Below, piece after piece: positions 17,001-63,218 of a DNA stretch of 64,000 nt (position 1 is its first letter; every line of letters begins with the position of its first letter). The stretch spans positions 1-64,000 of the IMG/VR virus record IMGVR_UViG_3300020186_000013. One strand, 5' to 3'. Under the pieces are notes generated by a model. The model had not been told where the DNA came from, ran no database searches, and saw nothing but the letters and a program-made list of their open reading frames with translations. The position numbers and the translations under genes are program-made.

Positions 17001-17552
17001 GCGGGCCTCGATCATGGCCTCCAACAGGATCTCTCCCGTCGAACCAACCAGGTAGCGGCACTTCTCGCTCTCCTCCTTCCACGGCATCTTGCCAATGACC
17101 ATCACCTTCGCAGGGTGCGGGCCGTCGGTCACCGGTGGCTTTACGTACGGGTCCATCTCAGACTGGATGAACGCCGCCATGTGCTGACCCCAGATGTGTC
17201 CGGGGACAAACGTCACCTCCTTCGGTGGCTGACCAGGGCGGACCTCGACCCGCAACGGGAACAGGGGCTCCCGGAGTGCCCGGCGGTAAAGCGTGTCCAA
17301 CCGCTGGGACGGCCGGTAAATGAGCTTCCCGGTCTTCTTCTCCTTCATGAAGACAGTCTTCAGCTCGGGCGGGTCGTCCTTCTCCTCGTGGTCTGTGAGC
17401 CGCAGGAAGTTCGGCCCCGGCGGGGGCATGCCGGGGGCGTTCCAGTGGTACGCCCCCCGGTTCAACATCATCTTCCGCTGGGTACGGACGACCTTCTTCT
17501 GAAGTTCCGCACCCAGAGTCACGACCCGACGCTTGAGCCGTTCAATTTCCAT
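14079..17552 (-). CDS. polA: family A DNA polymerase with N-terminal uracil-DNA-glycosylase-like domain and 3'-5' exonuclease
   Basis: UDG-like VMVIG...LVG.TG..L...ELRIVKP.YILLLG...VHPA; exo IAIDAE; TGRWKSSRPNLQNI; motif A DLMGAELR, motif B RNIAKTVIFGIAYG, motif C LQIHDAL. Confidence 0.92.
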   Translation of the reverse strand: MEIERLKRRVVTLGAELQKKVVRTQRKMMLNRGAYHWNAPGMPPPGPNFLRLTDHEEKDDPPELKTVFMKEKKTGKLIYRPSQRLDTLYRRALREPLFPLRVEVRPGQPPKEVTFVPGHIWGQHMAAFIQSEMDPYVKPPVTDGPHPAKVMVIGKMPWKEESEKCRYLVGSTGEILLEAMIEARISRQEMAHWYVTSLVKFMPPDDQTTLKSGWIADCMPLLHQELRIVKPDYILLLGADASKALLGSKAGVGYMEGRLVPFEFPVHFDEDSEPIIHQAMCMTVVHPAQVARDPASRRTLERGCGRFAFVLKEAKTGLTETDIDHRKCTSWEEYLAWEEEAAADLANEPPGMNIIAIDAEWEGTHPVNSNSYVRTIQMSWGHKKAICFVLNDTEGKCCFKDKNGKDATARLAKATTKFVNQYRIVGHFFVADLEHLVYHGFDFRKGFFIPTEDAEDGTPFWVRCMQGEGGLDTGMMIHSIEETALLGLESVAMRYTTCPRYDIALEDSVVELCKQLKIKRKALEGYGKIPDDILVPYGNYDADATRRIAVTAMGYLDEDYEFNCVWEPFGGSMLTLPIILEIHQQGIFVDIKRVKKLTRDFSTARASLEQAIVDEFGWPEFNIRSVQHVKEVLFGVEYNGKVTKDGEPIRLRPKGAKCLRVEPLLTTDKPPKKWSDIVAMGRTRDHTPGTGKAVLAILAQENPEVADQINMIRDYRFLDQVLKSLLRTPEEDANQNWITQKDEQGNILLDDEGGEEYEFTEGIAGCIDDDGMVRTHLYPTAETGRWKSSRPNLQNISKTRDPDYERLLVGDDGKTLYKHKLRSIFRSPPPGTLTPQTFWKDGKKVEGWVATTAEDEWELGERDLMGAELRGMAIMSNSTLMIDHTARALTYAEDGYSIDGMRCTHGEAGAPLKKCKTCPYPHPEFHDIHSSVAKMAFKLSCHPSKPGLASIGKVHLRNIAKTVIFGIAYGRQAKAIALAAKEQRKPGEPEVSVDDAQAVIDAVFAMYPELQDFFAEARFRAVNVGWLCNCFGRMRRFPATSDSKLEGEFERQAMNFPIQSMIADFVDRWLSVLHQARERLLPEFGEYIFYWQLQIHDALLIRNKKKYRDYIHNVLIPWSLTQVPIYPTRLNGTPIEGRGPYYLGSDKEICTWWGEKI

Positions 17553-44206: not shown

Positions 44207-47200
44207 ATGTCTACCTCCAAAAAGTTGACGATCGCGGAACAGCTGAAGATCAAGAAGAAGAAACAGCAGTCGGCGTTCCTCCAGACGGCGTCCCTCTCCA
44301 AGAAGGAGATGGGCCTGACGGGCTTCGAGGACGAGTGGACCAAGCGACTGATCATTGCCCAGCACTACCTGAAGAAGAGTAACGTCGCCAGCCTGCGGCC
44401 CATCTTGCCCGCCCTCCTCCAGCTCAAGGGCAAGCCGTACCACCTCAACGATCACTTCCCGTTCGAGCCCTTCTTCCGCACCCGCATGCCCTACATGACC
44501 CTCCTCAAGACGGGCCGGCAGGTGTCGAAGTCGACGAGTCTCTCGTCCCAGGGCATCATCTTTAGCAACGCCATCCCGTACTTCTCGACGCTGTACGTCA
44601 CACCGCTGTACGAGATGATCCGGCGGTTCAGCCACAACTACGTCCGGCAGTTCATCGAGACGTCGCCCGTGAAGCGACTGTTCATGAACTCCAAGACGAT
44701 CAACTCCGTCCTCCAGCGGTCGTTCCGCAACGGTTCGACCATGTACTTCAGCTTCGCGTACCTCGACGCCGAGCGTACCCGAGGTATCCCCGCCGACAAA
44801 GTTGTCATTGACGAGAGCGTAAGACTCGGTACAATGATCAGTACCCACACCGGCTCACGCCCGATCGAGACGTTCTCGCCCGGCGACGCGGTCCTGGGGT
44901 TCGACGAGGCTGGTCATGTCCGAAAAGATGAAGTCGTCAAGTGCTCCGACCACGGGGTCCGCGACTGCTACAGGTTCGAGTTCTCCGGCGGGTCGGCGGT
45001 CGAAGCTACTAGCGATTCTTGGCTCGCCACCACCGCCGGATGGAAACGGGTCGAAGCTGTCATCACTGACCTCAGCACAAGAGCAGATGATGCTGGGTTC
45101 GATGTTGGGCGACGGGTATCTGCGGAACACCGGCAAGCATTCGGCGTTCACGAGTCGTCACGGCTGGAAGCAGCACGCCTACAACTGCCGAAAGTTCCAG
45201 GTGTTATCCGAGTTCGTACGCACGCCTCCCAGGAAAGTGAAGAACTACGGCTACGGCGAGTGGTCGAGTCTGTGGCAGACTCGACAATCGGAGGCTTTGC
45301 AGGATATCGCTTCCTTGTGTCTCCGGGACGGCAAGAAGCGTGTGACGTCGGAGTGGCTCGACAGGATGACGTGGGAAGCGGTCGCGTGGTGGTACATGGA
45401 CGACGGCTCGCTCCAACTGCGGACGGCCGTGTTCAACACGCAGGGTTTCACGTCGGCGGAAGTGAAACTCCTGGCGAACTGGTTGACGGTTCGCGGGGTG
45501 GACGCGAAAGCCGCGAGAATCACGTCGCGGCACAACCCGACTGCGAGCTACTGGATCGTGCGACTGTCGGTCGACTCGACGCGTACGCTGGCGGCACTGA
45601 TCCGACCGTACGTGTTCCCGGAGATGACTTACAAACTGGACCTGCCTGCGAAGGCCGAGGCCCTGACCTGTCACTGGTGCTCGAAGGCGTTCGTTCCGGC
45701 TACGAACGGGCAACGGGTGTACGGCACGGGCGAGCAGAAACCGTGCTGCCGCTCGTCAACGTGCAAGGCCGAGCGGCACAAAGAACTCAACGAAACGCTG
45801 ATGGCGAAACCCGGCAAGCGGGGCGAGAAGAACGCCAAGCAGCGGGAGGGCTATGCGACGGACTTGGATACCCGTCGCAAGTACGAGCGGGAGAAGGCAG
45901 CACGCCTGTACGCGAAGAACCGGGAGAAGAGACTGGCGTACAAGAGGGCGTGGCGTGCCTCCAAGAAGTCGATCTCGTCCGGGTGACGTGGACGGGTAAG
46001 CACCGCGTTTTCGATCTCGAAACCAAAAACCACAACACGTTCCTGGCCGGCGGCGTCGCGGTACACAACTGCCAGGAGATGAACTACGACTTCTTGTCGA
46101 TCATCCACGAGACCTTGTCGGGCTCCCCGTTCGGCCTCAAGCAGTACGCGGGCACGCCCAAGTCGCTTGAGAACACGATCGAGAAGCTGTGGACCGACAG
46201 CAGCCAGGCCGAGTTCGCCATCAAGTGCCACCACGGTGGGTGCAACTACTGGAACGTCCCCGCCCTGTCCCACGACCTCGTGAAGATGATCGGGCCATGG
46301 CACTCGGGCATCTCCGAGCAGTGCCCCGGTATCGTCTGTGCCAAGTGTCGCAAGCCGATCGACCCTCGCCGCAACGGCCGGTGGATTCACGCCCAGCCCA
46401 ACGTGCGGTGGTCATTCGCCGGTTACCACATCCCGCAGATCATCATGCCGATGCACTACGCCACCCCCAAGAAGTGGGACATGCTGGTCGGCAAGATGCA
46501 GGGGCGGGGCAACACGCCCATGAACGTCTTCTTCAACGAGGTGTGCGGCGAGAGCTACGACGTGGGGTCGAAGCTGGTGACGGTCACGGAGCTTCAGGCG
46601 GCAGCCTGCCTGCCGTGGGAGAACAAGATCGAGCAGGCCGAGAAGCACCTGGACCAGTACCTGTACAAGATCCTGGCGGTCGACTGGGGTGGGGGTGGCG
46701 GCAAGCTGCGGAACTCGGCTGCCAAGCCCGGCAGCGAGCAGCGGGAGCGGACGAGCTACACCGTCCTGGTGGTCATGGGCATGCGGCCCGACGGGAAGAT
46801 CGACGTGATCTGGGGCCTCCGGTCGCTGCGGACGCACGCCCACGTCCACGAGGCCGAGCTGTGCATCGCCGCCATCCAGCGGTTCAAGTGCAGTCACTTC
46901 GTGCACGACTTCAATGGGGCGGGGGCGATCCGTGAGACCTTGGTGCGTCAGGCGGGCTTCCCGATGGGCAATATCATCCCGATCGCGTACCACGCCTCGG
47001 CCAAGAAAAACATCATGGTACACAAGCCGCCGACCGACGACCTGCCGCGTGACTGGTGGACGGTCGACAAGAGCCGATCGCTCCAGCTCACGTGTGAGTT
47101 GATCAAGTCCGGCCAGCTGCGGTTCTTCAAGGACGACTACCGCAGCTCCGACGACGCCGGGCTGATCCGTGACTTCCTGGCACTCATTGAGGAGAAGACG

Positions 47201-47416
47201 GAGAGGCCATCCGGCGGCGACGTGTACTGCATTACCCGCAACCCGACCGCCTCGGACGACTTCGCCCAGGGGGTCAACATCGGGTGTTGTGCGTTGTTCC
47301 AGTTGAGCGGTCAGTGGCCCGACGTGGCGGCGGCGAACCACCTGATCCTGCCGCTCGACGTCCTGTCCCATGTCCACCCGCAGCACCAGCCGGACTGGGA
47401 CGACGCGGGGAGCTAG
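44207..47416 (+). CDS. terminase large subunit (GpA-like), intein-containing
   Basis: LKTGRQVSKST Walker A, RGIPADKVVIDE|CQE Walker B after splicing, AGTPK, Zn site C..C/CAKCRK, nuclease LAVDWGGGG, DDFAQ. Confidence 0.85.
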   Translation: MSTSKKLTIAEQLKIKKKKQQSAFLQTASLSKKEMGLTGFEDEWTKRLIIAQHYLKKSNVASLRPILPALLQLKGKPYHLNDHFPFEPFFRTRMPYMTLLKTGRQVSKSTSLSSQGIIFSNAIPYFSTLYVTPLYEMIRRFSHNYVRQFIETSPVKRLFMNSKTINSVLQRSFRNGSTMYFSFAYLDAERTRGIPADKVVIDESVRLGTMISTHTGSRPIETFSPGDAVLGFDEAGHVRKDEVVKCSDHGVRDCYRFEFSGGSAVEATSDSWLATTAGWKRVEAVITDLSTRADDAGFDVGRRVSAEHRQAFGVHESSRLEAARLQLPKVPGVIRVRTHASQESEELRLRRVVESVADSTIGGFAGYRFLVSPGRQEACDVGVARQDDVGSGRVVVHGRRLAPTADGRVQHAGFHVGGSETPGELVDGSRGGRESRENHVAAQPDCELLDRATVGRLDAYAGGTDPTVRVPGDDLQTGPACEGRGPDLSLVLEGVRSGYERATGVRHGRAETVLPLVNVQGRAAQRTQRNADGETRQAGREERQAAGGLCDGLGYPSQVRAGEGSTPVREEPGEETGVQEGVACLQEVDLVRVTWTGKHRVFDLETKNHNTFLAGGVAVHNCQEMNYDFLSIIHETLSGSPFGLKQYAGTPKSLENTIEKLWTDSSQAEFAIKCHHGGCNYWNVPALSHDLVKMIGPWHSGISEQCPGIVCAKCRKPIDPRRNGRWIHAQPNVRWSFAGYHIPQIIMPMHYATPKKWDMLVGKMQGRGNTPMNVFFNEVCGESYDVGSKLVTVTELQAAACLPWENKIEQAEKHLDQYLYKILAVDWGGGGGKLRNSAAKPGSEQRERTSYTVLVVMGMRPDGKIDVIWGLRSLRTHAHVHEAELCIAAIQRFKCSHFVHDFNGAGAIRETLVRQAGFPMGNIIPIAYHASAKKNIMVHKPPTDDLPRDWWTVDKSRSLQLTCELIKSGQLRFFKDDYRSSDDAGLIRDFLALIEEKTERPSGGDVYCITRNPTASDDFAQGVNIGCCALFQLSGQWPDVAAANHLILPLDVLSHVHPQHQPDWDDAGS
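44816..46069 (+). mobile_element. intein (418 aa) in terminase Walker B
   Basis: Starts SVRLGTMIST..G.RPIE, ends VFDLETKNHNTFLAGGVAVHN, +1 Cys. Confidence 0.88.
45087..45986 (+). CDS. LAGLIDADG homing endonuclease encoded in +1 frame inside the intein
   Basis: MMLGSMLGDGYL and AVAWWYMDDGSL, FNTQGFT, LIRPYV...MTYKL, C-terminal CHWC/CCRS..C and basic tail; frame open from 44916. Confidence 0.85.
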   Translation: MMLGSMLGDGYLRNTGKHSAFTSRHGWKQHAYNCRKFQVLSEFVRTPPRKVKNYGYGEWSSLWQTRQSEALQDIASLCLRDGKKRVTSEWLDRMTWEAVAWWYMDDGSLQLRTAVFNTQGFTSAEVKLLANWLTVRGVDAKAARITSRHNPTASYWIVRLSVDSTRTLAALIRPYVFPEMTYKLDLPAKAEALTCHWCSKAFVPATNGQRVYGTGEQKPCCRSSTCKAERHKELNETLMAKPGKRGEKNAKQREGYATDLDTRRKYEREKAARLYAKNREKRLAYKRAWRASKKSISSG

Positions 47417-48318
47417 ATTGGTTTTGGCATCGGGTTATCGGGGTAGTATCGAATGGACACGTTACGGTCCTTCTGCCAGGCATTCCAAGCGGAAATGCAA
47501 CAGAACAAGAACTCACGAGGCTTCTTGCTCTTCCCGCCGTTCTTGCTCTTGATGACGGTGACACCCAGCCACTTCGCCAGTTGGCGGGTGGTGACGGTTG
47601 CCGGAGCACCGCTCTCCTCGCGAACTTCAGTCCAGAACTTCGTAGCTCTATTGGCGTCTACCTTGTAACTGCCGAACATCGCGGCGACCACCGGAGCACG
47701 CCGCAGGAAGCGAGCCTTGGTGCTGTTCAGGATGTCCACGCACCACAAGCAGAACGGGACAAAGTGTTGCAGAAGTTGAGCCCGTCTTGGGGCATCACGA
47801 GTACACAGTGTAAGGTTCTCCAGGCCCTCCGGTTCGCATTTGTACGTCGAAACGTACGTGTACAACCCGGACACCAGCAGATCGACCGTCTTGCCGTCGA
47901 GGCTGCACAGTTCCGGGATGATGCTGGCGTACATGCGGTTGATGTCGTTGAACTTACGGACGGATACGGTTGAGTCGAACGTCCCGTAGAGGGCTGCGAC
48001 GTCCTGCATCGTATCGCATTCGTAGTCTTGGACGGTGGCGTAGACCCGCTTGCGACCTTTGGTACTGCACTTCGACAGTGCAGTTGACGTGTGTTTGCCG
48101 TTGAGCCGGTAGATTAACCCTGTCTCGCGACAGAGAACACGTGCCCACTCGACAGCTCGTAACATTCCGGTGGCGACGTTATCCTCGTGAGTTTCGAGCC
48201 GAACGGCATCCTTATCGCGGTCGACTCCTGCCGCCAACATTTGAGACCACTCAGTTGCGACCTCTTGTGTGATGAGCACAATTTCTGGTTTGCCGTTGTT
48301 GAGAGCCCACCAAGCCAT
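47413..48318 (-). CDS. ParB/Srx-like N-terminal-domain protein
   Basis: ITQEVA.EW...DR, LNGKHTSTAL (cf. DGQHR..A), FD....R; GGAGG RBS; visibly lower GC than flanks. Confidence 0.5.
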   Translation of the reverse strand: MAWWALNNGKPEIVLITQEVATEWSQMLAAGVDRDKDAVRLETHEDNVATGMLRAVEWARVLCRETGLIYRLNGKHTSTALSKCSTKGRKRVYATVQDYECDTMQDVAALYGTFDSTVSVRKFNDINRMYASIIPELCSLDGKTVDLLVSGLYTYVSTYKCEPEGLENLTLCTRDAPRRAQLLQHFVPFCLWCVDILNSTKARFLRRAPVVAAMFGSYKVDANRATKFWTEVREESGAPATVTTRQLAKWLGVTVIKSKNGGKSKKPREFLFCCISAWNAWQKDRNVSIRYYPDNPMPKPI

Positions 48319-48344
48319 GTTGCACCTCCGGTGTTTGTGAGCGG

Positions 48345-48399
48345 TGCGAGTGCGGCGTATAACACCGCACTCGCGACGCTGTCATATGCCGCACTCGCA
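48345..48399. promoter_or_regulatory. three GCGAGTGCGG boxes (one forward, two inverted) upstream of ParB-like gene
   Basis: 48346-48355, 48365-48374 (rc), 48389-48398 (rc). Confidence 0.6.
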
Positions 48400-48507
48400 G
48401 CGATGTACGCACAGAGAGACTAGCCAGTCTGTGCACTAATCAGCAAGGTCAGTAGTGACAAAATGATGCTTTTGCGGCAGGACTGTAAACCGTCGTAAAT
48501 ACTGGAA

Positions 48508-48810
48508 TTAGACACATCTGGCTGACACCGTGTCCGACGGCTTGTAGAGCGGGATGCCGACGCACCCGCACGTGAACGTCCACGTAGGGCTCAGGCCGTC
48601 CTTGGTCAGTACGACGGAACCGTGCTGGGCGTCCTTGCACTGCTCGCAGTCGTCGTTGAAGTCTGTGTGGAACGGGCCGGGCCGACCGTTCATCGACTCG
48701 TGGGCCACGCACATCCCCTGGCAGGCGGGCCAGGAGTACGCACACACCGGGCAGTCGTCGTCGACCCCCAGCTGGCAGGTCAGGTCCTTGAAGTCATCCA
48801 TCGTTGCCAT
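48508..48810 (-). CDS. Cys-rich hypothetical protein
   Basis: Multiple CxxC. Confidence 0.5.
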   Translation of the reverse strand: MATMDDFKDLTCQLGVDDDCPVCAYSWPACQGMCVAHESMNGRPGPFHTDFNDDCEQCKDAQHGSVVLTKDGLSPTWTFTCGCVGIPLYKPSDTVSARCV

Positions 48811-49003
48811 CGGAATCCTCTTTCTCGGCGGGCGTGGCGGTCTTGAGTTCGACCGCCAGCCGCCAGTTCTCGGCCTTCACAACGAACTCGTACTCGTCGT
48901 ACGGCAGGGGTGTCACCTCAAACCACTGACTTGCCTCGACGAGACCAACGGCCATACGGTTGGCCTCGGTTGTGTTGTTAGCGATGATCTTGTACAGCTT
49001 CAT
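48794..49003 (-). CDS. small hypothetical protein
   Basis: GGAG RBS + ATG at 49003. Confidence 0.5.
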   Translation of the reverse strand: MKLYKIIANNTTEANRMAVGLVEASQWFEVTPLPYDEYEFVVKAENWRLAVELKTATPAEKEDSDGNDG

Positions 49004-49017
49004 GTTGTCTCCCGAGT

Positions 49018-49617
49018 TCAGTGCTTTCTTCTTCTCTTCTTGGTCCTCTGCCGCATCTCGGCCCGCGTCTCGTTTAGCGACATTTCGACGACGTGCGGCG
49101 GGATCTTGTTGTAGACGTCGATGACCGAGTGGTGGAACTGTTTGTCCTTGCCGTCGTTGATCTCCTTGCCCCACCGGAACCAGTCGACGACCGAGACGAA
49201 GTACGCGGCCTCCGCGTGATATCCAACTTCCGCTACGATGCCCTCCAGCTCCGTCTTAATGGGGACGATGTCGATGCCTTGGAACTCGTTGCAGTCGGGT
49301 TCGAGAGCGTCTGCGACCATGGCAAGGGTGATGTTCAGAAGCTCGACACCTTGCTGGTTGTAGACGTTGCCCGACTCCTTGTCGAAGATGCCCCCGGTGC
49401 GGACGAGTACGACCATGAGCACCCGTTTCAGGTCCCACGACAGTTTCTCGGCGTACAGCATCAAGTAGCGTTTGTAGATCTTGTGGAGTTCCACCCCGAG
49501 CGGGATCGGGTAGCGGTGCTCGGCGGCTTTCTTGATCTTCACCGCAGCCTCTTCAACGTCATCCCAGATCTGTTCTTTGACCACTCTCCATGCCGATGCG
49601 TGCTCTCGCGAATCCAC
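49018..49617 (-). CDS. hypothetical protein, paralogue of 49649..50125
   Basis: WDLKRVLMVV...YFVSVVDW. Confidence 0.65.
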   Translation of the reverse strand: MDSREHASAWRVVKEQIWDDVEEAAVKIKKAAEHRYPIPLGVELHKIYKRYLMLYAEKLSWDLKRVLMVVLVRTGGIFDKESGNVYNQQGVELLNITLAMVADALEPDCNEFQGIDIVPIKTELEGIVAEVGYHAEAAYFVSVVDWFRWGKEINDGKDKQFHHSVIDVYNKIPPHVVEMSLNETRAEMRQRTKKRRRKH

Positions 49618-49636
49618 GTCTGTACCCCTTGTGATG

Positions 49637-49652
49637 TAGAAACTGGCTTTAA
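49637..49652. promoter_or_regulatory. degenerate palindromic site TAGAAACTGGCTTTAA
   Basis: Gene junction. Confidence 0.45.
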
Positions 49653-50125
49653 GGTCTCGGCTGGTCCAGCAGCCTCTCCATTGCTGCCGCGAAGGGAGGA
49701 TGGAACGACGCCCAATCGTCCAGCGTCAGAAAGTACACGACGTCCGCCCCGATGCCGTTCTTCTTAATGAGCTCGTCCAACTCTTCGGCGATCTCCTTGA
49801 TGTTCGCTTGGAAGCCCGGAAACAACTCGGTGTCGGAGTCGCTCGCGTCCATGACCGTGCCCAGCGTCGTCTTCGACGACCGCGACCAGCACTCCTCTTG
49901 GTCCATGGCGGGGTCGAAGCGAGCTTCGTTGTCGCGGATGACGACCATGAGGAGCCGTTTGAGGTTCCACGTCATACCGAAGTTTTGCAGGATGCTGTTG
50001 AACATCTGCAACGACCGGATGGACTTGTGCAGTTCCTTTTGGTTGCGGTTGTGTGCGGCCCTCCGCAGAGTGCCCGCCTCGTTTTCGATCTCCCGCCAGG
50101 CGTTCGCTATCATTCGCTGGTCCAC
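49649..50125 (-). CDS. hypothetical protein, paralogue of 49018..49617
   Basis: WNLKRLLMVV...YFLTLDDW. Confidence 0.65.
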   Translation of the reverse strand: MDQRMIANAWREIENEAGTLRRAAHNRNQKELHKSIRSLQMFNSILQNFGMTWNLKRLLMVVIRDNEARFDPAMDQEECWSRSSKTTLGTVMDASDSDTELFPGFQANIKEIAEELDELIKKNGIGADVVYFLTLDDWASFHPPFAAAMERLLDQPRP

Positions 50126-50660
50126 AGTATGTTCCTCCGTTATCGGTTGAGGGGGTCGCTAAAGTAGTGCACGCCGACGATGGCGTGCACCAGGTTGCTG
50201 ATGCCCCGAACTCAAACAACTCGCGGGCAACCTCTTCGACGGACGCGGCAGTCGGCCTCCACCGGACGTACGTCACCATCTTGCCACGCTGTGTTCGCCG
50301 TGCGACTCGTGTCGGGGTTCTTCTCCCCCACCCGCCGCTGTTGTAACTGTGCAAGTAGTACGGCAGCCAGCTACTGATGTACTGGCGACCGACCCGTATA
50401 GCCACGAACGAGTGTGCGGGCAGGTAGAGCATGATTTTGTTCGCGATCCTTTGCGTCGTCGGCTGGTGGATAGTCGAGTCAAGTAGGGCGTGCAGTGGGT
50501 CGGGCTTGTCGTTCAGGTACAAGAGCAACGCATCGGCCCACGGGTCGTCGCTGTGGACGCTCTCCTTCAAGTGGTCGGCGAACGAGAACAACGCCGTCCG
50601 TTCGAGCGGCTGAGTCATGGCCGCAATGCCGTGCGTCAACAACTCCTGGTCAAGGACCAT
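49764..50660 (-). CDS. hypothetical protein with TIGR02996-like N-terminus; 3' extent doubtful
   Basis: IAAMTQPLERTALFSFADHLKE; C-terminal part overlaps the next gene and looks non-protein-like. Confidence 0.4.
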   Translation of the reverse strand: MVLDQELLTHGIAAMTQPLERTALFSFADHLKESVHSDDPWADALLLYLNDKPDPLHALLDSTIHQPTTQRIANKIMLYLPAHSFVAIRVGRQYISSWLPYYLHSYNSGGWGRRTPTRVARRTQRGKMVTYVRWRPTAASVEEVARELFEFGASATWCTPSSACTTLATPSTDNGGTYCGPANDSERLAGDRKRGGHSAEGRTQPQPKGTAQVHPVVADVQQHPAKLRYDVEPQTAPHGRHPRQRSSLRPRHGPRGVLVAVVEDDAGHGHGRERLRHRVVSGLPSEHQGDRRRVGRAH

Positions 50661-50676
50661 CAGGTTCCTTTCTGCC

Positions 50677-51201
50677 TTATTGCTGAACCAGCAAAGCCGT
50701 GACGTGCATCTCGTCGATGACGTTGCCTTCTTGCAATTGTTGGACGATGTACAGCAATGCTTTTTTCTGCCCGCATCCGGTGGGTAGACTTTTACCTACA
50801 TGTGCGATCGCCAGTAGCAGTTGTGCGATCTGTTGCTTATGTCCTGGACCGTTGTTGCCTCCGATTTTGCCTGCGATCGTCGGCTGTGTGATCACAAACC
50901 AGGGCACCATTCTTCGGTCTTTACGTACGGTGCAGGATCGGATTACTCCTTGTCGCACGTACCCAGCGTGGTGCAGGTCGGTCAGGCGTCGACGCACCTC
51001 TTGTAATTCACGCAGCTCTTTCTGCTGCTTAGCCGTTGCCTTGGTCCACAGTTCGACGGCGGTGCAACCCGGCCTAGCTGCGACCATGCTCAGAACCATG
51101 ATGGCGTGTTTGGCCTGAGCACCGGATGTGACGTGAGCGTGTGCCGCGTCGGAACTTGAACTCGGATCTCCAGTATGGAACAGGGGGTTGTCAAGATCCA
51201 C
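50677..51201 (-). CDS. winged-HTH phage protein
   Basis: DP.SS.DAA...PGCTAVEL...VRRRLTDL...GYV....R.C.V. Confidence 0.6.
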   Translation of the reverse strand: MDLDNPLFHTGDPSSSSDAAHAHVTSGAQAKHAIMVLSMVAARPGCTAVELWTKATAKQQKELRELQEVRRRLTDLHHAGYVRQGVIRSCTVRKDRRMVPWFVITQPTIAGKIGGNNGPGHKQQIAQLLLAIAHVGKSLPTGCGQKKALLYIVQQLQEGNVIDEMHVTALLVQQ

Positions 51202-51204
51202 GTG

Positions 51205-51749
51205 TTATCCTTTCTTTGTTTTCTCCGCAACGAACTCATTCACAGCGTTGAGAGCGTCCGTGCAGTTGCAAGCGTAGCCGTACGTGCCGTCGGGGCGGAA
51301 GACGATCTGCTGGCTGGCCCGGCACTTGTCACACCGCCCAGCACTAAGCCCGCCGAGCATGTACTCGATCTCGGCCGCTGTCGGCTTGCGACCGAACAGC
51401 CGCTTGAACAGGCTTGCGAAGCTCTGCTCCTCCCGCGTGGTCGCCGTCGCGGTCTGCTGGTTGGCTGCGTGCGACGTGGCCATGCAGCAGCTCCGCAGGC
51501 CGTGGAGGATTGAGCTGTAGGCGGCACACACCGTCGCGGGCGTCGATGCTGCCGCCGACCCTTTGCCGACCCGCACGTTCAGCTTCTTCAACCACACCGC
51601 CCGAGTGACGTTGCCGGGGAACTCGACCACGCCCACCCAGTAGGAGTGACCGAACCCGCCCGACACCTTGCGGCGTTCCCGCAAGATCCCGGTCTCGTTC
51701 GTTGTCGTGTCGAACACTTCCTTGCCCTTGTTCTCGTCGGCTGCGTCAT
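51205..51749 (-). CDS. hypothetical protein (possible frameshift at start)
   Basis: RBS+ATG at 51749 is out of frame with the coding-like body. Confidence 0.4.
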
Positions 51750-51751
51750 GC

Positions 51752-51988
51752 CTACTCCTTACCTGTGAGTCCACGATCCTTGCACTCTCTGGCCAGATCC
51801 AGGGCGTCTTCCGGGGTCTCGCCGCGTCCGAGGAAGAACCCGAACGCGACGTCAATCAGGTCCATCATGTAGTCGTCGGCCTTGTCCTTGATTATGTCGT
51901 GGCGTTCACGCCACGCCTCGACGTGGACCTTGACCCACGCAGCGACATCGAAACCTTCTTGACCGAGTTCATTGGCTCGCTTGCTCAT
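51752..51988 (-). CDS. small hypothetical protein
   Basis: GGAGG RBS, ATGA overlap. Confidence 0.6.
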   Translation of the reverse strand: MSKRANELGQEGFDVAAWVKVHVEAWRERHDIIKDKADDYMMDLIDVAFGFFLGRGETPEDALDLARECKDRGLTGKE

Positions 51989-52260
51989 AGATCCTCCCAG
52001 TTGATCTCGGGCAGGCACTTCCACCCGAGCTTCTTCAGGATGTAGTGATTGTGATGGTGGTGAAACATGACTTCGGGGCTGGCGTCCCAGTCCGGACTCA
52101 CCAGCGTGAACGTCCCTCGTCCAGGCAAGATCACGTACGACTGGCCCGTGCGGGGGATGCACCAGATGCCACGTTCGTTTACGTTGCGGATCAGCATGCG
52201 GAAGAACTCCATGTCCTTCTTCGTCGGTTCGTACGGTTTGAGCTTCTTCGTGTCGGCCAT
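51985..52260 (-). CDS. small hypothetical protein
   Basis: AGGAG RBS; first gene after non-coding region. Confidence 0.65.
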   Translation of the reverse strand: MADTKKLKPYEPTKKDMEFFRMLIRNVNERGIWCIPRTGQSYVILPGRGTFTLVSPDWDASPEVMFHHHHNHYILKKLGWKCLPEINWEDL

Positions 52261-52268
52261 ACTGTCTC

Positions 52269-52831
52269 CTAAGTTCGATGGGGATAAAGGTTGACGTACC
52301 TTGATGGCGTTGTCAGAATCTTTCAGTCCTAAGTTCTGTGCGTGCGTGAGCTTACCGCTGAGTTCGATTTGCCCAGTTAAGCACCCGGCGTATCGTGTCA
52401 GGGATTTGCGAGATTTTGTAAGAAAGACGACGGCTAAGTTCGACGTGCGGAGAGTCCCTGATACTCGCGTTGCACATTTCCTGACCGGATAAACTTGGTT
52501 TGAACGTCCGCCCTAAGTTCGATTTCAGACGTATACACCAACACGTACGACTTTCCGATGAACTTCGGGTCAGCATTAAGTTCGAGGCCGATCCGACTGA
52601 GTTCCGACTCCCGGTCTGTTATGGCAGACCCACGACAAAATCTGTCACACGTTCGACAGCTACCTAACTCCTTACACCGCCGCTACTTCTGCCAAGTTCG
52701 AGGGCGGTGTCGGTTTTCCCCGGAGCCTAAGTTCGATGTGCCGGAAATAATGTTTGAAAACCTTCTCTGGATTATTTCCGCCTCGAAGATCCCCCAGCGG
52801 TCGCACGGTGCGACCGCCGGATCGAACTTAG
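52269..52831. repeat. cluster of ~11 CTAAGTTCGA(T)-like boxes plus hairpins; candidate replication origin or major regulatory region
   Basis: Boxes near 52269, 52329, 52358, 52434, 52513, 52576, 52597, 52648, 52692, 52727 and inverted 52821; largest non-coding stretch in window. Confidence 0.7.
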
Positions 52832-52876
52832 AGGAGCCCATCATTCGCTCCAGGATCGCGTTTACGGGGCATTCAC

Positions 52877-54550
52877 CTACGAGTCGCCTTCTGCCCCGCC
52901 CGTGTCGTGGATCGGCTGCTGGAAGCCCAGGGCGGCGGTCATGAGGTGACCGCTGCCGAAGTTGGCCTGGACGTAGAGGATCGCCCCGTTCTGCCGGGCG
53001 ACCTTAACCAGGTACGCGGGCAGGTCATTCTCGACACTGGTTGAGGGTGCCTCGAAGCGGATCTCCTTACCCGCCATTAGCAGCCGCCCGTGGTACTTCG
53101 TGCGGCCGTCTCGCAGGACGATACGGTCGAACCGGAGGTAGGCGTTCATGATCGGCCGCAGGCGGGTCTTGTGGTTCGGACTGTGGTAGTACAGGTTGCC
53201 GCCCTCCTCGACGTACGCGGCGTTGGCCCTCGGGGCCGGGGTCACCCGCCGCTCCTTCGCCGGCTCACACAACCTGTTGGCGATGGCAGCGGCGTCCGAG
53301 GTCAACTCCTTACGGAGGTCACTGATGTCGACCTTCTCCCGTTTGAGCCCCAACAGCAGCCCTTCAGCCTGGTGGTCCTCGGCCCCCGTCAGGAAGGCCG
53401 ACACCGCCACCCGCCACGGCCTCGCTTGCCTGACGATCTTCTGGAACATCTGCCCGGCGTCGCAAGACCGCAGGTAGTGGTCGACGCTCCGCGAGGACAG
53501 GTCCTCGGGTGAGGCGAGGGAGATGTGGCCGTTCACCTTCATGGCGTGCAGCACGGTCGCGGCGTCCATACGCCAACTCCACAGCACCACCTTGCGGCCC
53601 GCCAGGAGCTGCCACGCCCGGTGCGTCCACTGCGTCTCCCCGTGGTGGTAGGCGACCATGGGGAGCGGGTTCATGCTGTTCTTGGCGTTACGGACCTGGA
53701 TGCGGGCCAAGAGCATCGGGCTGTTGACGGCGATGACCGTAGCGTTGGAGGCGTCGGACGGCATGACGCAGTCGAGGCCCGCGAGCCCGACTTCGTCACG
53801 GCCTCGGAGTCCGCCCTTCATGGACTCGATCGACTTGACCACCATGTCCTCCTTCGAGCCGCGTCGGCCTACGAAGAAGAACGCACTGAGACGGTCGGGC
53901 AGGTCGTAGTACGGCACGACGAGGATCTCGTTCCAGCCCCTCCCCCGGAACAGCGGGGTGCCGCTGTGCCGGAGCATGCGGTTCACACCCGGCACGGTCG
54001 TTCGGGGACAAAAGGCTTTGGACGCCAGCCCCGCCAGCGACGCCCCCAAGATCTTGCCAGGGCCACGCCGCCACAGCTCGGGGCTCAGGTTGATCGTCAG
54101 GTGGAACCGGGTAAGGAGAAAGTTGTGGCCGGGGGTCCGCGAGTGGGACTCCAGGTTACGCTGAGCGTTCGCCCATAACCCACGCATCGTGTCGCGGCGG
54201 GCAACGATCTCGTCGACGTGCTTGCGGATGCGTTCGTCGGTGAACGTGCCGTCCGGGACTGCGATCTGGCTCTCGGTAATCTTGAGCAGCGTCTCGGGGA
54301 GTGGTAGTTTCCAGACGCTGGCGGCGAGGTCGATCATGTCGCCCGACGACCCGCAGCCGAAGCAGTTGCACCAGACGGCCTTCCGGATCGGGTCGTCGTA
54401 AACGTGAAACCGATCTCCTCCGCACAGCGGACATACGGTACGCTGGGGAAGTGCCTGACCGTTAGTGGGAATGCCAAGAACGGCAAACACCTCCGTCCAC
54501 CGAAGGTGAACGTCCAGGGATAATCTTAAAGGAGCCCCCATCCATGCCAC
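52877..54550 (-). CDS. primase-like protein (N-terminal Zn-binding domain, degenerate TOPRIM)
   Basis: CPLCGG....CNCFGCGSSGDMIDL, LVVPYYD; no EG.xD catalytic motif seen. Confidence 0.6.
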   Translation of the reverse strand: MAWMGAPLRLSLDVHLRWTEVFAVLGIPTNGQALPQRTVCPLCGGDRFHVYDDPIRKAVWCNCFGCGSSGDMIDLAASVWKLPLPETLLKITESQIAVPDGTFTDERIRKHVDEIVARRDTMRGLWANAQRNLESHSRTPGHNFLLTRFHLTINLSPELWRRGPGKILGASLAGLASKAFCPRTTVPGVNRMLRHSGTPLFRGRGWNEILVVPYYDLPDRLSAFFFVGRRGSKEDMVVKSIESMKGGLRGRDEVGLAGLDCVMPSDASNATVIAVNSPMLLARIQVRNAKNSMNPLPMVAYHHGETQWTHRAWQLLAGRKVVLWSWRMDAATVLHAMKVNGHISLASPEDLSSRSVDHYLRSCDAGQMFQKIVRQARPWRVAVSAFLTGAEDHQAEGLLLGLKREKVDISDLRKELTSDAAAIANRLCEPAKERRVTPAPRANAAYVEEGGNLYYHSPNHKTRLRPIMNAYLRFDRIVLRDGRTKYHGRLLMAGKEIRFEAPSTSVENDLPAYLVKVARQNGAILYVQANFGSGHLMTAALGFQQPIHDTGGAEGDS

Positions 54551-55716
54551 CTCTGTCAGACCACGTCTCCGACGTGAACGGTGAGGAACTGTCCAGGCTG
54601 AGTAAGCTGTACGAGTTCCCCGACTTCGTAAAAAAAGCCAACATGGACCAGGTGTTCAGGCCGAACGACCTGGCCGTCACGGTCTATGCCGACCCCATCC
54701 GCAAGCAGTTCCCCTGCCACAACGCCGCCTCAACCTGGCTGAGCACGGTCTACTTCACCGAGAAGAAGGCCGAGTTCCACCCCAAGGACCAGGTCCGCAT
54801 CAAGCAGCGGCTCGACCACTACGTCGGGTACTGGCGGATCAAGGAGTCGGTCGACAAATATATGGTCAAGCACGCAGAGTATAACAAGGACGCCGAAGCA
54901 GGTCTGCCCGACTCGTCATACGCCTTCGTCTGGACCGACAACGAGACCGGGCGGAAGGACCGTCACCTGCGGATGGTCAACGCCCGTGAGGTCAAGGCGG
55001 CAGCTGATTACCTGCACGAGTACGCCGACCGGTTCACCTTCCGCGATCGTAACACGATTGCCAAGAAGATTCTCACCAAGGCCGCGAGCTTCGGTGCCGC
55101 CGTCGGTAACCGGATCGAGTTCCTGGAGAAGCAGGCCGGGCACGGCGTGTGCGACCCCGACGAGGTCGTCGCTATGCTCACCGACCGGGCCAAGCTGGCC
55201 ACCCTGCCGGCCTTGAAAGACCAGATCCTCAAGCTGGCCCACATCGTCAAGACCCAGCCACGCCAGGCCCTCACGCCCGACATGATGGTCAAGCTGGCTG
55301 AGACCGTCGACCAGATCGACCGGACGATCGGCCTGGCCGGCAAGTACACCGACAAACTGCCCCGCCCCGAAGACGTGATCTTCAAGGCGACCTTCAGCAA
55401 GGCAGCGTCCGACATCGCCGAGCACTGTGCCCTGACCTCGGGCAACATCTACAAGAAGGCCGACTTCGCCAAGATCGCCCTCGACGATGTGCGGTCCCTG
55501 TTCGGGACAGACTTCGCTGAGGAGGTCAAGGCCGGGTTGGACAAGGTCGACCCAGAGAAGATGGCCGAACTGGTCCACACCCTGCCGCGACCCGACGCCG
55601 AGCTGTTCGACCGGCTCATGTCGGACAGCGGCGTGTTCCCGCAGATGAACAAGGCCGCGAGTGCTAAGCAGGGCTTCTCGGCCCAGGAGCTTGCGGCACT
55701 CGCGGCAGGCTACTAA
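54544..55716 (+). CDS. hypothetical protein rich in KxA motifs, possible virion/head-internal protein
   Basis: 390 aa, AAGGAG upstream, strong codon bias, 15 KxA tripeptides. Confidence 0.7.
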   Translation: MPPLSDHVSDVNGEELSRLSKLYEFPDFVKKANMDQVFRPNDLAVTVYADPIRKQFPCHNAASTWLSTVYFTEKKAEFHPKDQVRIKQRLDHYVGYWRIKESVDKYMVKHAEYNKDAEAGLPDSSYAFVWTDNETGRKDRHLRMVNAREVKAAADYLHEYADRFTFRDRNTIAKKILTKAASFGAAVGNRIEFLEKQAGHGVCDPDEVVAMLTDRAKLATLPALKDQILKLAHIVKTQPRQALTPDMMVKLAETVDQIDRTIGLAGKYTDKLPRPEDVIFKATFSKAASDIAEHCALTSGNIYKKADFAKIALDDVRSLFGTDFAEEVKAGLDKVDPEKMAELVHTLPRPDAELFDRLMSDSGVFPQMNKAASAKQGFSAQELAALAAGY

Positions 55717-59666: not shown

Positions 59667-60057
59667 TGAGTTTTTTCCGTTTAGCGTAGTGCAGGTTCTT
59701 GTACTCCGGGCGGCTTTGTAGCTCTTCCCGACACTCCTTTTGCACGGCATAGCGAGCCGCCTTGAGAAGCGGGAAGCGTGCCCTCCCGTCGTCGAGAGTG
59801 TCTATGTGCAGCGGCCCCAGTGTGCACATGTTTGCCAGCAAGGCACACGGGTACTTGGCCCACCGCAGGACTACCAGGGCGTTGTCGTCGTCGCCGTTGA
59901 GGCACCACGACGTGTCGACGCACGCATGCAGATGGCTAAGAGCCTTCAGATGGCTCCTGACGTGTCCGTTGCGGATGTCCTCGACGACCCCGTCGACGAG
60001 CTTCTGGACCTCCTCCTGGTAGAGGCCCTGCTCCTCCTGCTCTTTCAGGTCGCTCAC
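59611..60057 (-). CDS. hypothetical protein
   Basis: GTGA overlap with sigma gene stop. Confidence 0.55.
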   Translation of the reverse strand: MSDLKEQEEQGLYQEEVQKLVDGVVEDIRNGHVRSHLKALSHLHACVDTSWCLNGDDDNALVVLRWAKYPCALLANMCTLGPLHIDTLDDGRARFPLLKAARYAVQKECREELQSRPEYKNLHYAKRKKLNGPTKEKGSEQTPQADGQ

Positions 60058-60650
60058 TTGTACTCCTCCCACAGCTCGCGTGTGTGTAAGTGCATGTACT
60101 GCTCGCACTTCCGAAGTGCGTTCACGATCCTCTGTCGCACTACCTCCTTGGAGACCGGGATCGGAAACGTATTGCCGATCTCGCCGAGAGTGAGTTCATT
60201 CCAAAACCGCTCGTGGATGACGTGGCGATGCTTGGCGATCAGGTGTCGCAGCATCGTAGCGACATGGTCACGACGTTCCTCGTCCGCCAGGTGCTGCTCT
60301 CCCTCGTTGTCAACGGTCGCAAAAACGGGGGCCGTGCCGAGTACGTACGAGTTTCCTAGCTCACTGAACAATGCGACATACGGCCGACGGTAAATCCGTC
60401 CCCTGCGACGTCGTATCGTGGCGAACCAATGCTGCTCGGCCCGCCACGACAGTATCTCGAAGTACATGCACTTGACGCAGTACGTGCTGAACTTCCCCGG
60501 ACCGGGTTTTTAGTTGTTGACCGCGTGCATGTACCCGATGCCGGCCGGTCCCATTAAGTCTAAGGCAGACTCCCCCGCTCTTTTGAACCGGGTCACGGCC
60601 CAGAAGAGCAGCGGGAGGTGCTTCTCGGAGTCAATCGGTGCCGCCGTCAC
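60054..60650 (-). pseudogene. sigma70-family factor with in-frame TAA at 60510-60512
   Basis: Region 2 HLPLLFWAV...DLMG..GIG...AVNN*KPG.GKFSTY is in frame with region 4 LTLGEIG...VSKEVVRQ; GTG start coupled to upstream stop. Confidence 0.75.
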
Positions 60651-62708: not shown

Positions 62709-62923
62709 CACAACCTTTCGGTTTGGTCCTTGTCCGCCTTGACGGACTCGGTCTCGCTGTCTTCGACGATCCACGCCTTGGCGGGGAAGCGACCCGACAG
62801 GGCTGCCTGCACGGCGTTGTGCTCGGCCTCCTGCTGCGTCGCCCCCTCGACGGTGATGTCCATCGTCGAGTCAACCTGCTCACGCCGGAGGAGGGTTACC
62901 CGCCACCGCTTTTTCTTTGCCAC
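62708..62923 (-). CDS. small hypothetical protein
   Basis: ITVEGATQQEAE motif. Confidence 0.55.
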   Translation of the reverse strand: MAKKKRWRVTLLRREQVDSTMDITVEGATQQEAEHNAVQAALSGRFPAKAWIVEDSETESVKADKDQTERL

Positions 62924-63116
62924 TGTCCTTCTCCTTGGTGTCGACCAGGAGCCACACGCGGACCCAGACCTGCTCGGTGCCCAGCGACACGTGGTCGGGC
63001 ACGTCGTGCTTGATGCCCTTCTCGGCGAGCATCTTCACGGTCGCGTCGACGTACTGCTGCTTGGTGGCCTCGCGTTGCTCGGGCGTCAACTTTTCGGGGT
63101 CGTATACGATAGGCAC
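62880..63116 (-). CDS. small hypothetical protein
   Basis: VS.G..VWVRVW motif. Confidence 0.5.
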   Translation of the reverse strand: MPIVYDPEKLTPEQREATKQQYVDATVKMLAEKGIKHDVPDHVSLGTEQVWVRVWLLVDTKEKDSGKEKAVAGNPPPA

Positions 63117-63134: not shown

Positions 63135-63218
63135 GGGTCATGGTTTTGGAATTCCATGACCCCATAAAAAATCGAACTTAGGGTCGAGTTAGAAACCGGA
63201 TTCTATGTCGAACTTAAG
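63135..63218. promoter_or_regulatory. composite site: hairpin + TCGAACTTA box + TAGAAACCGGATTCTA palindrome + TCGAACTTA box
   Basis: GGGTCATGG/CCATGACCC stem; ATCGAACTTAG at 63171; palindrome 63190-63205; GTCGAACTTAA at 63207. Confidence 0.65.

What the first reader, a model, noticed from the sequence alone, without database searches (positions are those of the whole stretch)
52261..52876. 600-bp non-coding region with ~11 CTAAGTTCGAT boxes and hairpins: candidate origin
Seen: ten same-orientation boxes (several degenerate) at irregular 21-79 bp spacing, then one inverted box at 52821. Inverted repeats occur at 52742-52780 (CGGAAATAAT/ATTATTTCCG) and 52797-52817 (GCGGTCGCAC/GTGCGACCGC). GC is lower than the flanks, and the region lies immediately downstream of a primase-like gene. 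Inference: an iteron-type replication origin or packaging site. Alternatively, a guide-RNA-like array with a short conserved box and variable spacers that might serve the Nop/RAMP pair.
Basis: partly seen in the sequence, partly recalled or inferred. Interest (0 to 1): 0.7.

Follow-up and report, generated by a model that had tools for sequence, protein, structure and literature searches.

The report
Box-repeat array beside a phage primase
A 616-base non-coding stretch in an uncultivated 208-kb microbial-mat phage carries eleven copies of an 11-base box and a short core conserved in distant relatives, next to a primase gene; it is most likely a protein-binding control site such as a replication origin, but no function is shown.

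Summary
Window 52261-52876 is non-coding and the largest such run in the genome. It holds ten same-orientation copies of CTAAGTTCGAT (three perfect) and one perfect inverted copy. An AT-rich hairpin and a GC-rich hairpin lie between the last direct box and the inverted box. The gene upstream is a true DnaG-type primase by fold, but it is the phage's second primase. The canonical primase-helicase-polymerase module lies 32-43 kb away.

The boxes occur only in this lineage. About 49 relatives, including a complete colinear 224-kb genome, lack them. The array heads a 5.4-kb block of orphan genes that two sequenced relatives lack. However, the spacer between boxes 9 and 10 is an 18-base core found nowhere in IMG/VR outside this phage family. 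It sits 156 bp after the primase stop here and in a 66% relative, where it is flanked by different direct repeats between convergent genes.

Best reading (about 0.35): an iteron-like protein-binding array around a conserved core, an origin-like site. An operator array, an RNA element, a packaging site and a recombination patchwork remain open. The CRISPR-like or Nop/RAMP guide idea has no support. GC skew is uninformative, and no RNA or raw-read data were available.

The parts
52261..52876 (.). Whole non-coding region between the primase stop and the start of the 91-aa gene.
   Evidence: GC is 0.523. ORFs inside have GC3 of 0.52-0.69, against 0.83 for real genes. No gene is called in 8 assemblies. 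It is the largest non-coding-like run in the genome and the only one with a repeated 10-mer.
52269..52279 (+). Box B1, perfect. On the - strand it abuts the ribosome-binding site and ATG of the 91-aa gene.
52329..52339 (+). Box B2 (2 mismatches).
52358..52368 (+). Box B3 (1 mismatch).
52434..52444 (+). Box B4 (1 mismatch).
52513..52523 (+). Box B5, perfect.
52543..52574 (+). Spacer segment copied from another gene. It is 30/32 identical to genome 121016-121047, inside the 312-aa gene 120895-121833, and 29/30 identical to the G001 orthologue.
52576..52586 (+). Box B6 (2 mismatches).
52596..52607 (+). Box B7, degenerate (one inserted base).
   Evidence: read
52647..52657 (+). Box B8, weak (only the GTTCGA core is kept).
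   Evidence: read
52692..52702 (+). Box B9 (2 mismatches).
52705..52722 (-). Family-conserved core ('K-box', CGGGGAAAACCGACACCG), 156 bp after the primase stop and tightly flanked by B9 and B10.
   Evidence: The identical 18-mer lies at the same distance in L042. Two tandem copies lie in the L112 group. In IMG/VR it occurs only in these phages.
52727..52737 (+). Box B10, perfect. It forms the left arm of the dyad.
52742..52780 (.). AT-rich hairpin (10-bp arms, 19-nt loop). It is the lowest-GC segment of the region.
52794..52820 (.). GC-rich hairpin (13-nt arms, 92% complementary) with no T-run on either strand.
52821..52831 (-). Box B11, perfect and inverted. It forms the right arm of the dyad, 45 bp after the primase stop.
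52291..52319 (+). Sigma-70-like promoter match (TTGACG-17-CAGAAT with an upstream TG) pointing into the array. This is a consensus match only.
52877..54550 (-). Second, divergent DnaG-type primase. It has a zinc ribbon and an RNA-polymerase/TOPRIM core. Its C-terminal domain resembles the N-terminal domain of the SaPIbov1 Rep and Cch helicases.
   Evidence: AlphaFold2 pLDDT 90.5. Foldseek and VIA-align match DnaG at Z 13. Residues 433-551 match 8tch at Z 10.5 and 5dgk at Z 9.4.
51985..52260 (-). First gene after the array (91 aa, orphan).
47417..52260 (-). Lineage-specific block of about 10 small orphan genes (GC 0.584), transcribed away from the array. G001 and L042 lack it.
63171..63217 (-). 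Second site. Two direct boxes (63207-63217 and 63171-63181) tightly flank one copy of the genome-wide palindromic motif. The site lies upstream of the 78-aa gene 62880-63116.

Best explanation
The region acts as DNA. It is an array of binding sites for one unidentified sequence-specific protein, built around a short core that this phage family conserves just downstream of its second primase gene.

Proposed mechanism (inferred, not shown):
1. The protein loads on the 11-bp boxes.
2. The oppositely oriented pair B10/B11 brackets the AT-rich and GC-rich hairpins, and B9/B10 bracket the conserved core.
3. Oligomerisation along B1-B9 builds a nucleoprotein complex.
4. This complex distorts or melts the AT-rich segment.

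This would be an iteron-type, origin-like site, for initiation or for control of initiation. The neighbouring primase could prime there. The box copies near the palindromic motif at 63.2 kb and 71.6 kb would be secondary regulatory sites of the same protein.
For: SHOWN.
- The region holds ten direct boxes and one inverted asymmetric 11-bp box, far above chance, in the genome's largest non-coding run.
- The inverted pair encloses the lowest-GC 40 bp, below the genome's 0.1 percentile, and closes a 105-nt dyad with z = -4.8.
- The region lies directly 3' of a gene that is a DnaG-type primase by fold.
- The 18-nt core between B9 and B10 is identical, and at the identical distance (156 bp) from the primase stop, in L042. 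L042's neighbouring 390-aa protein is only 66% identical and its GC differs.
- In L042 the core is flanked by other direct repeats (27 nt x2 and 20 nt x2) and lies between the convergent primase and terminase genes, so it cannot be a promoter for a downstream gene there.
- The core occurs twice, inverted, at the primase stop in the L112 group and nowhere else in 2.9 million IMG/VR contigs.
- Box orientation relative to genes differs between sites, as expected for DNA sites rather than RNA motifs.
- Boxes show no consistent position in predicted RNA structure.

FROM THE LITERATURE. SaPI origins lie directly downstream of the pri/rep genes. They consist of short iterons, some inverted, around AT-rich melting segments (bioRxiv 10.64898/2026.10.17.759575).
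Against: - No initiator was identified. No Rep_3 gene is present. The adjacent primase lacks the winged-helix domain that binds iterons in SaPI Rep. All block proteins are orphans.
- The 11-bp boxes at irregular, unphased spacings of 20-79 bp are unlike classical tandem iterons of 17-22 bp.
- The AT-rich segment is modest (GC 0.38).
- DnaA boxes are at chance level.
- Cumulative GC skew bottoms at 73 kb and GC3 skew follows gene classes. Nothing turns at 52.5 kb.
- The canonical primase/DnaB-like helicase/PolA module lies at 14-20 kb.
- The complete colinear relative G001 has no such array anywhere.
- About 35 relatives show no core better than background, so the family can replicate without it.
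- No read-depth or read-end data could be had; the runs are held as contigs only.
Confidence: 0.35

Rival explanations
1. Operator array. The boxes are sites of a phage transcription regulator that silences or times the lineage-specific operon 52260-47417, and two other promoters. The long array acts as a nucleation or roadblock region rather than as an origin.
For: - The array fills the whole upstream region of the orphan-gene block, and B1 abuts the first gene's ribosome-binding site.
- Array and block are both absent from G001 and L042.
- At 63.2 kb two boxes tightly flank one copy of the genome-wide palindromic promoter/operator-like motif. At 71.6 kb a box follows a terminator hairpin upstream of the next gene.
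- The phage has its own ECF-like sigma gene.
Against: - No promoter was recognised on the gene strand inside the array.
- Sequences downstream of the boxes share no -10 element.
- Ten sites over 560 bp is far more than operators usually need.
- The conserved core lies between convergent genes in L042, where there is nothing to regulate.
- No DNA-binding protein was recognised nearby.
Confidence: 0.22
2. RNA-level element. The region is transcribed either as a long leader of the block (- strand) or as a non-coding RNA of about 500 nt (+ strand). The repeated motif, or the copied 32-nt segment, acts in RNA, for example as a protein sponge or as an antisense RNA against the mRNA of gene 120895-121833.
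For: - The spacer 52543-52574 is 30/32 identical to an internal part of the most conserved shared gene, so a + strand transcript would be antisense to it.
- A sigma-70-like promoter on the + strand lies just upstream.
- The - strand fold has z = -2.3.
- The single inverted box can pair with any direct box.
Against: - There is no Rfam match.
- Boxes are not consistently unpaired or paired.
- The + strand fold is not unusual (z = -1.4).
- Box and K-box orientations flip between sites and lineages.
- Only one of ten spacers matches anything in the genome.
- No RNA run was listed.
Confidence: 0.12
3. Packaging (pac) recognition site. The repeated boxes and the conserved core would be bound by the terminase small subunit.
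For: - In L042 the conserved core lies in the 193-bp gap directly after the terminase large-subunit gene.
- In this genome the terminase gene (44207-47416) is 5.4 kb away.
- Some pac sites consist of repeated short boxes (general knowledge: SPP1, P1).
Against: - No small terminase subunit was identified.
- Contig ends in 14 assemblies do not coincide with the array.
- Read-end pile-ups could not be examined because the runs are held as contigs only.
- The element keeps its distance to the primase stop, not to the terminase gene.
Confidence: 0.08
4. Non-functional patchwork. The region is filler DNA at the junction of an acquired gene block, built by repeated illegitimate recombination or template switching at a short microhomology (AAGTTC), and has no selected function.
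For: - It sits at the border of a low-GC, lineage-specific block.
- It contains a 32-nt fragment of another gene, and that source segment itself carries AAGTTC.
- An unrelated contig in the same mats shares 34 bp with B1 plus its spacer.
- Several boxes are degenerate.
Against: - The 11-mer has four perfect copies here, and further copies lie in two other intergenic regions (perfect at 63171; one mismatch at 71633; two at 63207).
- The 18-nt core is perfectly conserved across lineages at a fixed distance.
- The population carries only one SNP in 616 bp.
Confidence: 0.1

Closest known systems
SaPI (staphylococcal pathogenicity island) replication origin, the pri-rep-ori module
   Same: The origin lies immediately 3' of the primase/helicase genes. 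It has many short iterons, some inverted, around AT-rich melting segments and spans about 300 bp. The C-terminal domain of this primase resembles the N-terminal domain of SaPIbov1 Rep.
   Different: SaPI iterons are 5-7 bp long, in two opposed sets, and are bound by the winged-helix C-terminal domain of Rep. Here the boxes are 11 bp long, ten of the eleven point one way, no Rep helicase or winged-helix domain is present, and the AT-rich part is short.
Phage P4 ori and crr (type I iterons TGTTCACC bound by the alpha primase-helicase); from my own knowledge
   Same: Short asymmetric boxes lie at irregular spacing in a main site, with a second distant cis site. Here that second site would be the box pair at 63.2 kb, 10 kb away. 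A primase gene is associated.
   Different: P4 alpha carries its own origin-binding domain. Nothing shows that this primase binds double-stranded DNA, and the second site here is embedded in a promoter-like motif.
Plasmid and prophage iteron origins (RK2 oriV, P1 oriR/incA, lambda ori); from my own knowledge
   Same: Multiple direct repeats plus an odd inverted one, an AT-rich stretch and a GC-rich palindrome. Arrays can lie downstream of the replication gene (P1 incA).
   Different: Classical iterons are 17-22 bp long, tandem and helically phased, and lie next to a Rep gene. Here the spacing is 20-79 bp without phasing, no Rep_3 gene is present and DnaA boxes are not enriched.
Dispersed asymmetric repressor sites (mycobacteriophage cluster A stoperators, P1 C1 operators, Mu operators); from my own knowledge
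   Same: Asymmetric 11-17-bp sites occur in many copies, including copies beside promoters elsewhere in the genome.
   Different: Those sites are spread genome-wide. Here 11 of about 16 copies are packed into 563 bp, and no repressor is recognised.
CRISPR arrays and phage mini-arrays
   Same: A short conserved unit alternates with variable spacers, and one spacer matches a phage gene.
   Different: The unit is 11 bp (not 23-55), the spacing is irregular (9-68 bp between boxes), there are no cas, RAMP or Nop genes, and the tandem-repeat finder sees no array.

Membership tests
Iteron-type replication origin | Several direct repeats of one protein-binding sequence. | tested here: met
   There are 10 direct boxes and 1 inverted box, far above chance.
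Iteron-type replication origin | Repeats of 17-22 bp, in tandem or helically phased. | tested here: not met
   The boxes are 11 bp long. Spacings are 20-79 bp with no common phase, and the tandem-repeat finder sees no array.
Iteron-type replication origin | An adjacent AT-rich unwinding element. | tested here: inconclusive
   The 40-bp GC minimum of 0.38 at about 52740 is below the genome's 0.1 percentile, but it is short and lies inside a hairpin.
Iteron-type replication origin | A cognate initiator (Rep) gene next to it or elsewhere in the genome. | tested here: not met
   Rep_3 is absent from the genome. The adjacent gene is a DnaG-type primase without a recognisable double-stranded-DNA-binding domain. 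The neighbours are orphans.
Iteron-type replication origin | A compositional strand switch at the site. | tested here: not met
   The GC-skew minimum is at 73 kb. GC3 skew follows gene classes and does not turn at 52.5 kb. Skew is probably uninformative in this genome.
Iteron-type replication origin | Positional conservation in relatives. | tested here: inconclusive
   The boxes are absent from all relatives. The 18-nt core is conserved at the same place in L042 and the L112 group, with other flanking repeats. G001 and about 35 other relatives lack it.
Iteron-type replication origin | Initiation of DNA synthesis at the site. | not testable with these tools
   Only assembled contigs of the runs are held.
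SaPI-type pri-rep-ori module | A Rep helicase with an iteron-binding winged-helix domain encoded upstream of the ori. | tested here: not met
   The protein ends after a domain resembling the Rep N-terminal domain (residues 433-551). The region holds no remnant of the C-terminal extension carried by the 850-930-aa homologues.
CRISPR or guide-RNA array | Regular repeats of 23-55 bp with spacers of uniform size, plus effector genes. | tested here: not met
   The boxes are 11 bp long and irregularly spaced. There is no Rfam hit. No RAMP or Nop domain occurs in the genome.
attP of a temperate phage | Arm-type repeats next to an integrase gene. | tested here: not met
   The genome has no tyrosine or serine recombinase.
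Partition centromere (parS, parC, tubC) | Repeats bound by a ParB, ParR or TubR protein encoded beside a partition NTPase. | tested here: not met
   ParB_N and ParA (AAA_31) are absent. Actin-like and tubulin-like NTPases were not tested.
tRNA gene or tRNA remnant cluster | A T-arm (stem, TTCGAAT-like loop, stem) within a cloverleaf. | tested here: not met
   The box resembles half a T-arm, but the 3' stem is missing. ARAGORN and Rfam find nothing here.
DnaG-type primase (flanking gene) | A zinc ribbon plus an RNA-polymerase/TOPRIM core. | tested here: met
   There are four invariant Cys residues. The model matches Aquifex and E. coli DnaG over residues 7-432 at Z 13.

The most novel reading that the evidence does not exclude
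The array is a Cas-independent 'box-spacer' RNA locus. It would be transcribed from the + strand, and its inter-box segments would be captured pieces of phage genes. One segment is a near-perfect antisense to a highly conserved segment of the family's most conserved gene, in this phage and in relatives. The RNA would then time that gene's expression or interfere with co-infecting relatives. A second novel reading is that the conserved 18-nt core with lineage-specific flanking repeats is the so far unknown origin of this whole family of 200-240-kb phages.
Probability: 0.07. Interest if true: 0.75.

Novelty: new variant of a known kind. Interest (0 to 1): 0.4.

Why it matters
Origins and other cis-acting control sites of uncultivated jumbo phages are essentially unmapped. 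This locus offers a concrete, testable candidate. It has an 11-bp box to use as bait for its binding protein. It also has an 18-nt core that is perfectly conserved between lineages whose neighbouring 390-aa proteins are only 51-66% identical. If the core marks an origin or packaging signal, it would help to orient and compare genomes of a large metagenomic phage family (441 homologues of the neighbouring gene). If not, the finding is an ordinary lineage-specific regulatory repeat.

Tried and rejected
- **Cultured phages.** DNA and protein searches against 50,697 phage records found no match.
- **Identical contigs.** L008, L019 and eight other assemblies of the same phage differ by one SNP (52371) and give no comparative signal.
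- **GC skew as an origin test.** The minimum at 73 kb and the GC3 regimes follow gene classes, although nearly all genes are on one strand. I judged the test uninformative.
- **Remnant of a helicase domain.** tblastn with the C-terminal extensions of 45 long primase homologues found nothing in the region.
- **tRNA remnants.** The box resembles half a T-arm, but ARAGORN and Rfam are negative.
- **Box pairs in bacterial genomes.** The hits examined are tandem repeats, not tRNA genes, in unrelated organisms.
- **Box pairs in IMG/VR and JGI metagenomes.** Only this phage and unrelated low-GC contigs turned up.
- **ECF-sigma or -10 promoter reading of the box.** No shared downstream element was found.
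- **DnaA boxes.** They occur at chance level.
- **RNA sponge.** The boxes are not consistently in loops.
- **Array in G001.** Only coding repeats were found.
- **RNA-seq.** No run was listed.
- **Orphan proteins.** The 91-aa gene has no homologue and no usable Atlas hit. Pfam, PHROGs and NCBIfam found nothing for the block proteins.
- **The 390-aa neighbour.** It folds well but matches no PDB fold.
- **Flank of the foreign 34-bp match.** It is not in IMG/VR.
- **Complex prediction.** Not used, because it gives no verdict for protein-DNA pairs and no candidate binder stood out.
- **Mistyped calls.** Searches returned errors only; one search read an unrelated 60 bases.

Full report
**Source.** The window is the first 64 kb of a 208,145-bp IMG/VR virus record. 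The record is linear, estimated 93% complete and has GC 0.625. It comes from microbial-mat metagenomes. The window carries:
- a PolA-UDG fusion;
- a DnaB-like helicase with an adjacent canonical primase (phrog_47, E 4e-30);
- SbcCD-like genes;
- ThyX with a LAGLIDADG insert;
- a 1069-aa large terminase.

Nearly all genes are on the - strand.

**The observation.** There are ten copies on the + strand between 52269 and 52737: three perfect, two with one mismatch, three with two, and two degenerate. One perfect inverted copy lies at 52821-52831.
- The window holds 16 matches with at most two mismatches, against 7.8 +/- 2.5 in shuffles. Nine of them lie within 563 bp (Poisson P about 1e-16).
- Both inverted repeats are real.
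- With the two flanking boxes they form a 105-nt dyad that folds far better than shuffles (z = -4.8).
- The region is non-coding. Its ORFs have GC3 of 0.52-0.69 against 0.83 +/- 0.06 for real genes. Eight independent assemblies call no gene in it.
- Rfam, ARAGORN and the tandem-repeat finder find nothing.
- It is the largest non-coding-like run in the genome and the only one with a repeated 10-mer.

**More copies elsewhere.** The box also occurs on the gene strand in two other intergenic regions.
- At 63207 and 63171, two copies tightly flank one copy of a genome-wide palindromic motif.
- At 71633, a copy lies directly after a terminator-like hairpin.
- Two further copies lie inside genes, at 141734 and 149385.

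The orientation relative to the genes is opposite to that of the main array. This argues for a DNA site rather than an RNA motif.

**The flanking gene.** The 557-aa protein has only weak profile hits. With 39 homologues it gives a confident model (pLDDT 90.5).
- Residues 7-432 match the DnaG zinc-binding and RNA-polymerase domains at Z about 13.
- Residues 433-551 match the N-terminal domain of SaPIbov1 Rep (Z 10.5) and of the SCCmec helicase Cch (Z 9.4).
- It is therefore a real primase, but a second one. The canonical primase sits beside the helicase at 17.5-20.4 kb.
- Many homologues (850-930 aa) carry a further C-terminal part. No remnant of that part lies in the non-coding region.

**Relatives.** The neighbouring divergent 390-aa gene has 441 homologues, many on contigs of 200-240 kb.
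- The primase, this gene and the terminase gene are syntenic in the complete 224-kb genome G001, which shares 95 of 230 genes colinearly, and in L042.
- The primase and the 390-aa gene are also adjacent in two JGI contigs and in about 49 IMG/VR loci.
- None of them contains the box.
- The four relatives whose gene calls or sequence I read directly (G001, L042 and the two JGI contigs) have no comparable non-coding run after the primase.
- G001 and L042 also lack the 5.4-kb block of orphan genes (47417-52260, GC 0.584) that the array heads.
- G001 has no similar non-coding array anywhere.

**A conserved core.** A short-word comparison then showed that the spacer between B10 and B9 is not random. 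The 18-mer CGGGGAAAACCGACACCG lies 156 bp after the primase stop both here and in L042.
- In L042 it is flanked by two 27-nt and two 20-nt direct repeats.
- It lies there in a 193-bp gap between the convergent primase and terminase genes.
- In the L112 group two copies lie at the primase stop in the opposite orientation, upstream of a small gene. By my own reading of its sequence, untested, that gene may encode a helix-turn-helix protein.
- In all of IMG/VR the pattern occurs only in these phages.
- The other relatives score no better than background.

So a family element exists at this position in at least three lineages, each time with its own flanking repeats. In this phage the flanking repeat has multiplied to eleven copies.

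**A copied gene fragment.** Positions 52543-52574 are 30/32 identical to an internal part of gene 120895-121833. That gene encodes 312 aa, is 85% identical to its G001 orthologue, and has no family assignment. The segment is also 29/30 identical to the G001 orthologue. This explains the odd partial contig matches seen. A different contig in the mats shares 34 bp with B1 plus its spacer, and its flanks are unknown.

**Weighing the readings.**
- The anatomy points to a DNA-level protein-binding array built around a conserved cis element. The relevant features are one asymmetric site in many copies, an opposed pair around the most AT-rich segment, a conserved core between two boxes, and a convergent-gene context in L042.
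- The closest worked-out example is the SaPI origin, which lies just after the pri/rep genes and has short iterons, some inverted, around AT-rich melting points. P4 ori/crr and plasmid iteron origins are also close (my knowledge).
- Defining features of those families fail here: there is no initiator, no phasing, no skew signal, and the element is absent from most relatives.
- I therefore hold the origin-like reading at about 0.35. The rivals are an operator array for the orphan block (0.22), an RNA element (0.12), a recombination patchwork (0.10) and a pac site (0.08).
- The genome has no integrase, resolvase, ParA (AAA_31 family), ParB or Rep_3 gene. It also has no RAMP or Nop domain. This removes the attP and ParAB-type partition readings, and the Nop/RAMP and CRISPR-like guide readings.

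**Limits.**
- The population is nearly clonal, with one SNP.
- No RNA run was listed.
- The public runs are held only as contigs, so depth and read ends could not be used.
- The gene map is from my own simple caller, checked against public gene calls only around the locus.

Noticed in passing
window 1357, 11300, 35680, 43216, 49645, 55988, 63198; genome 71687, 81463, 92026, 111883, 120415, 138447, 148338, 166347, 198529: A quasi-palindrome of about 18 bp, TAGAWKC-CAGTTTCTAG, has 18 copies, 15 of them intergenic, on both strands. It often lies right after a stop codon, with its TAG running into the next gene's ribosome-binding site. G001 has an analogous palindrome (AAAACCGGTTTT core) in about 50 copies. 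It is probably the family's promoter or operator motif, with lineage-specific arms.
   Followed up: partly
window 60054-60650 (-): An ECF-like sigma factor gene (Sigma70_r2 E 6e-8, Sigma70_r4 E 3e-9) has a single in-frame TAA at 60510-60512 inside region 2. It may be a pseudogene, a readthrough or a split gene; this is not resolved.
   Followed up: partly
window 52877-54550 (-), residues 433-551: The second primase ends in a beta-rich domain that matches the N-terminal domain of the self-loading helicases SaPIbov1 Rep and Cch. Many homologues (850-930 aa) carry a further C-terminal part of about 350 aa with no Pfam, PHROG or PDB sequence match.
   Followed up: partly
window 54544-55716 (+): A 390-aa, mostly helical protein is encoded divergently from the primase. 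It is very conserved (441 homologues, 51-92% identity) across metagenomic phages of 200-240 kb. It folds well (pLDDT 83) but has no PDB fold match and no family.
   Followed up: partly
window 52543-52574 and genome 121016-121047: A 32-nt piece of the family's most conserved shared gene (312 aa, unassigned) is copied into the array. It is also 29/30 identical to the G001 orthologue.
   Followed up: partly
window 52269-52302: Contigs in two mat samples (X6, X7) share these 34 bp (box B1 plus 23 nt) but continue into sequence that is in neither this genome, G001 nor IMG/VR. Another element in the mats carries the box.
   Followed up: partly
window 44207-47416 (+) and 2152-4269 (-): The large terminase is 1069 aa. 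Its L042 orthologue has intein and LAGLIDADG hits. ThyX (705 aa) also carries a LAGLIDADG domain. Both are likely intein-containing genes.
   Followed up: no
whole genome: Almost all genes are on one strand, yet GC3 skew has three regimes: negative at 0-36 kb, flat at 36-75 kb, and strongly positive at 75-150 kb. These regimes track gene classes (replication, small genes, the block of genes best conserved with G001), so skew is not a replication signal here.
   Followed up: yes
window 14079-17552 (-): The DNA polymerase A is fused to an N-terminal uracil-DNA-glycosylase-superfamily domain.
   Followed up: no
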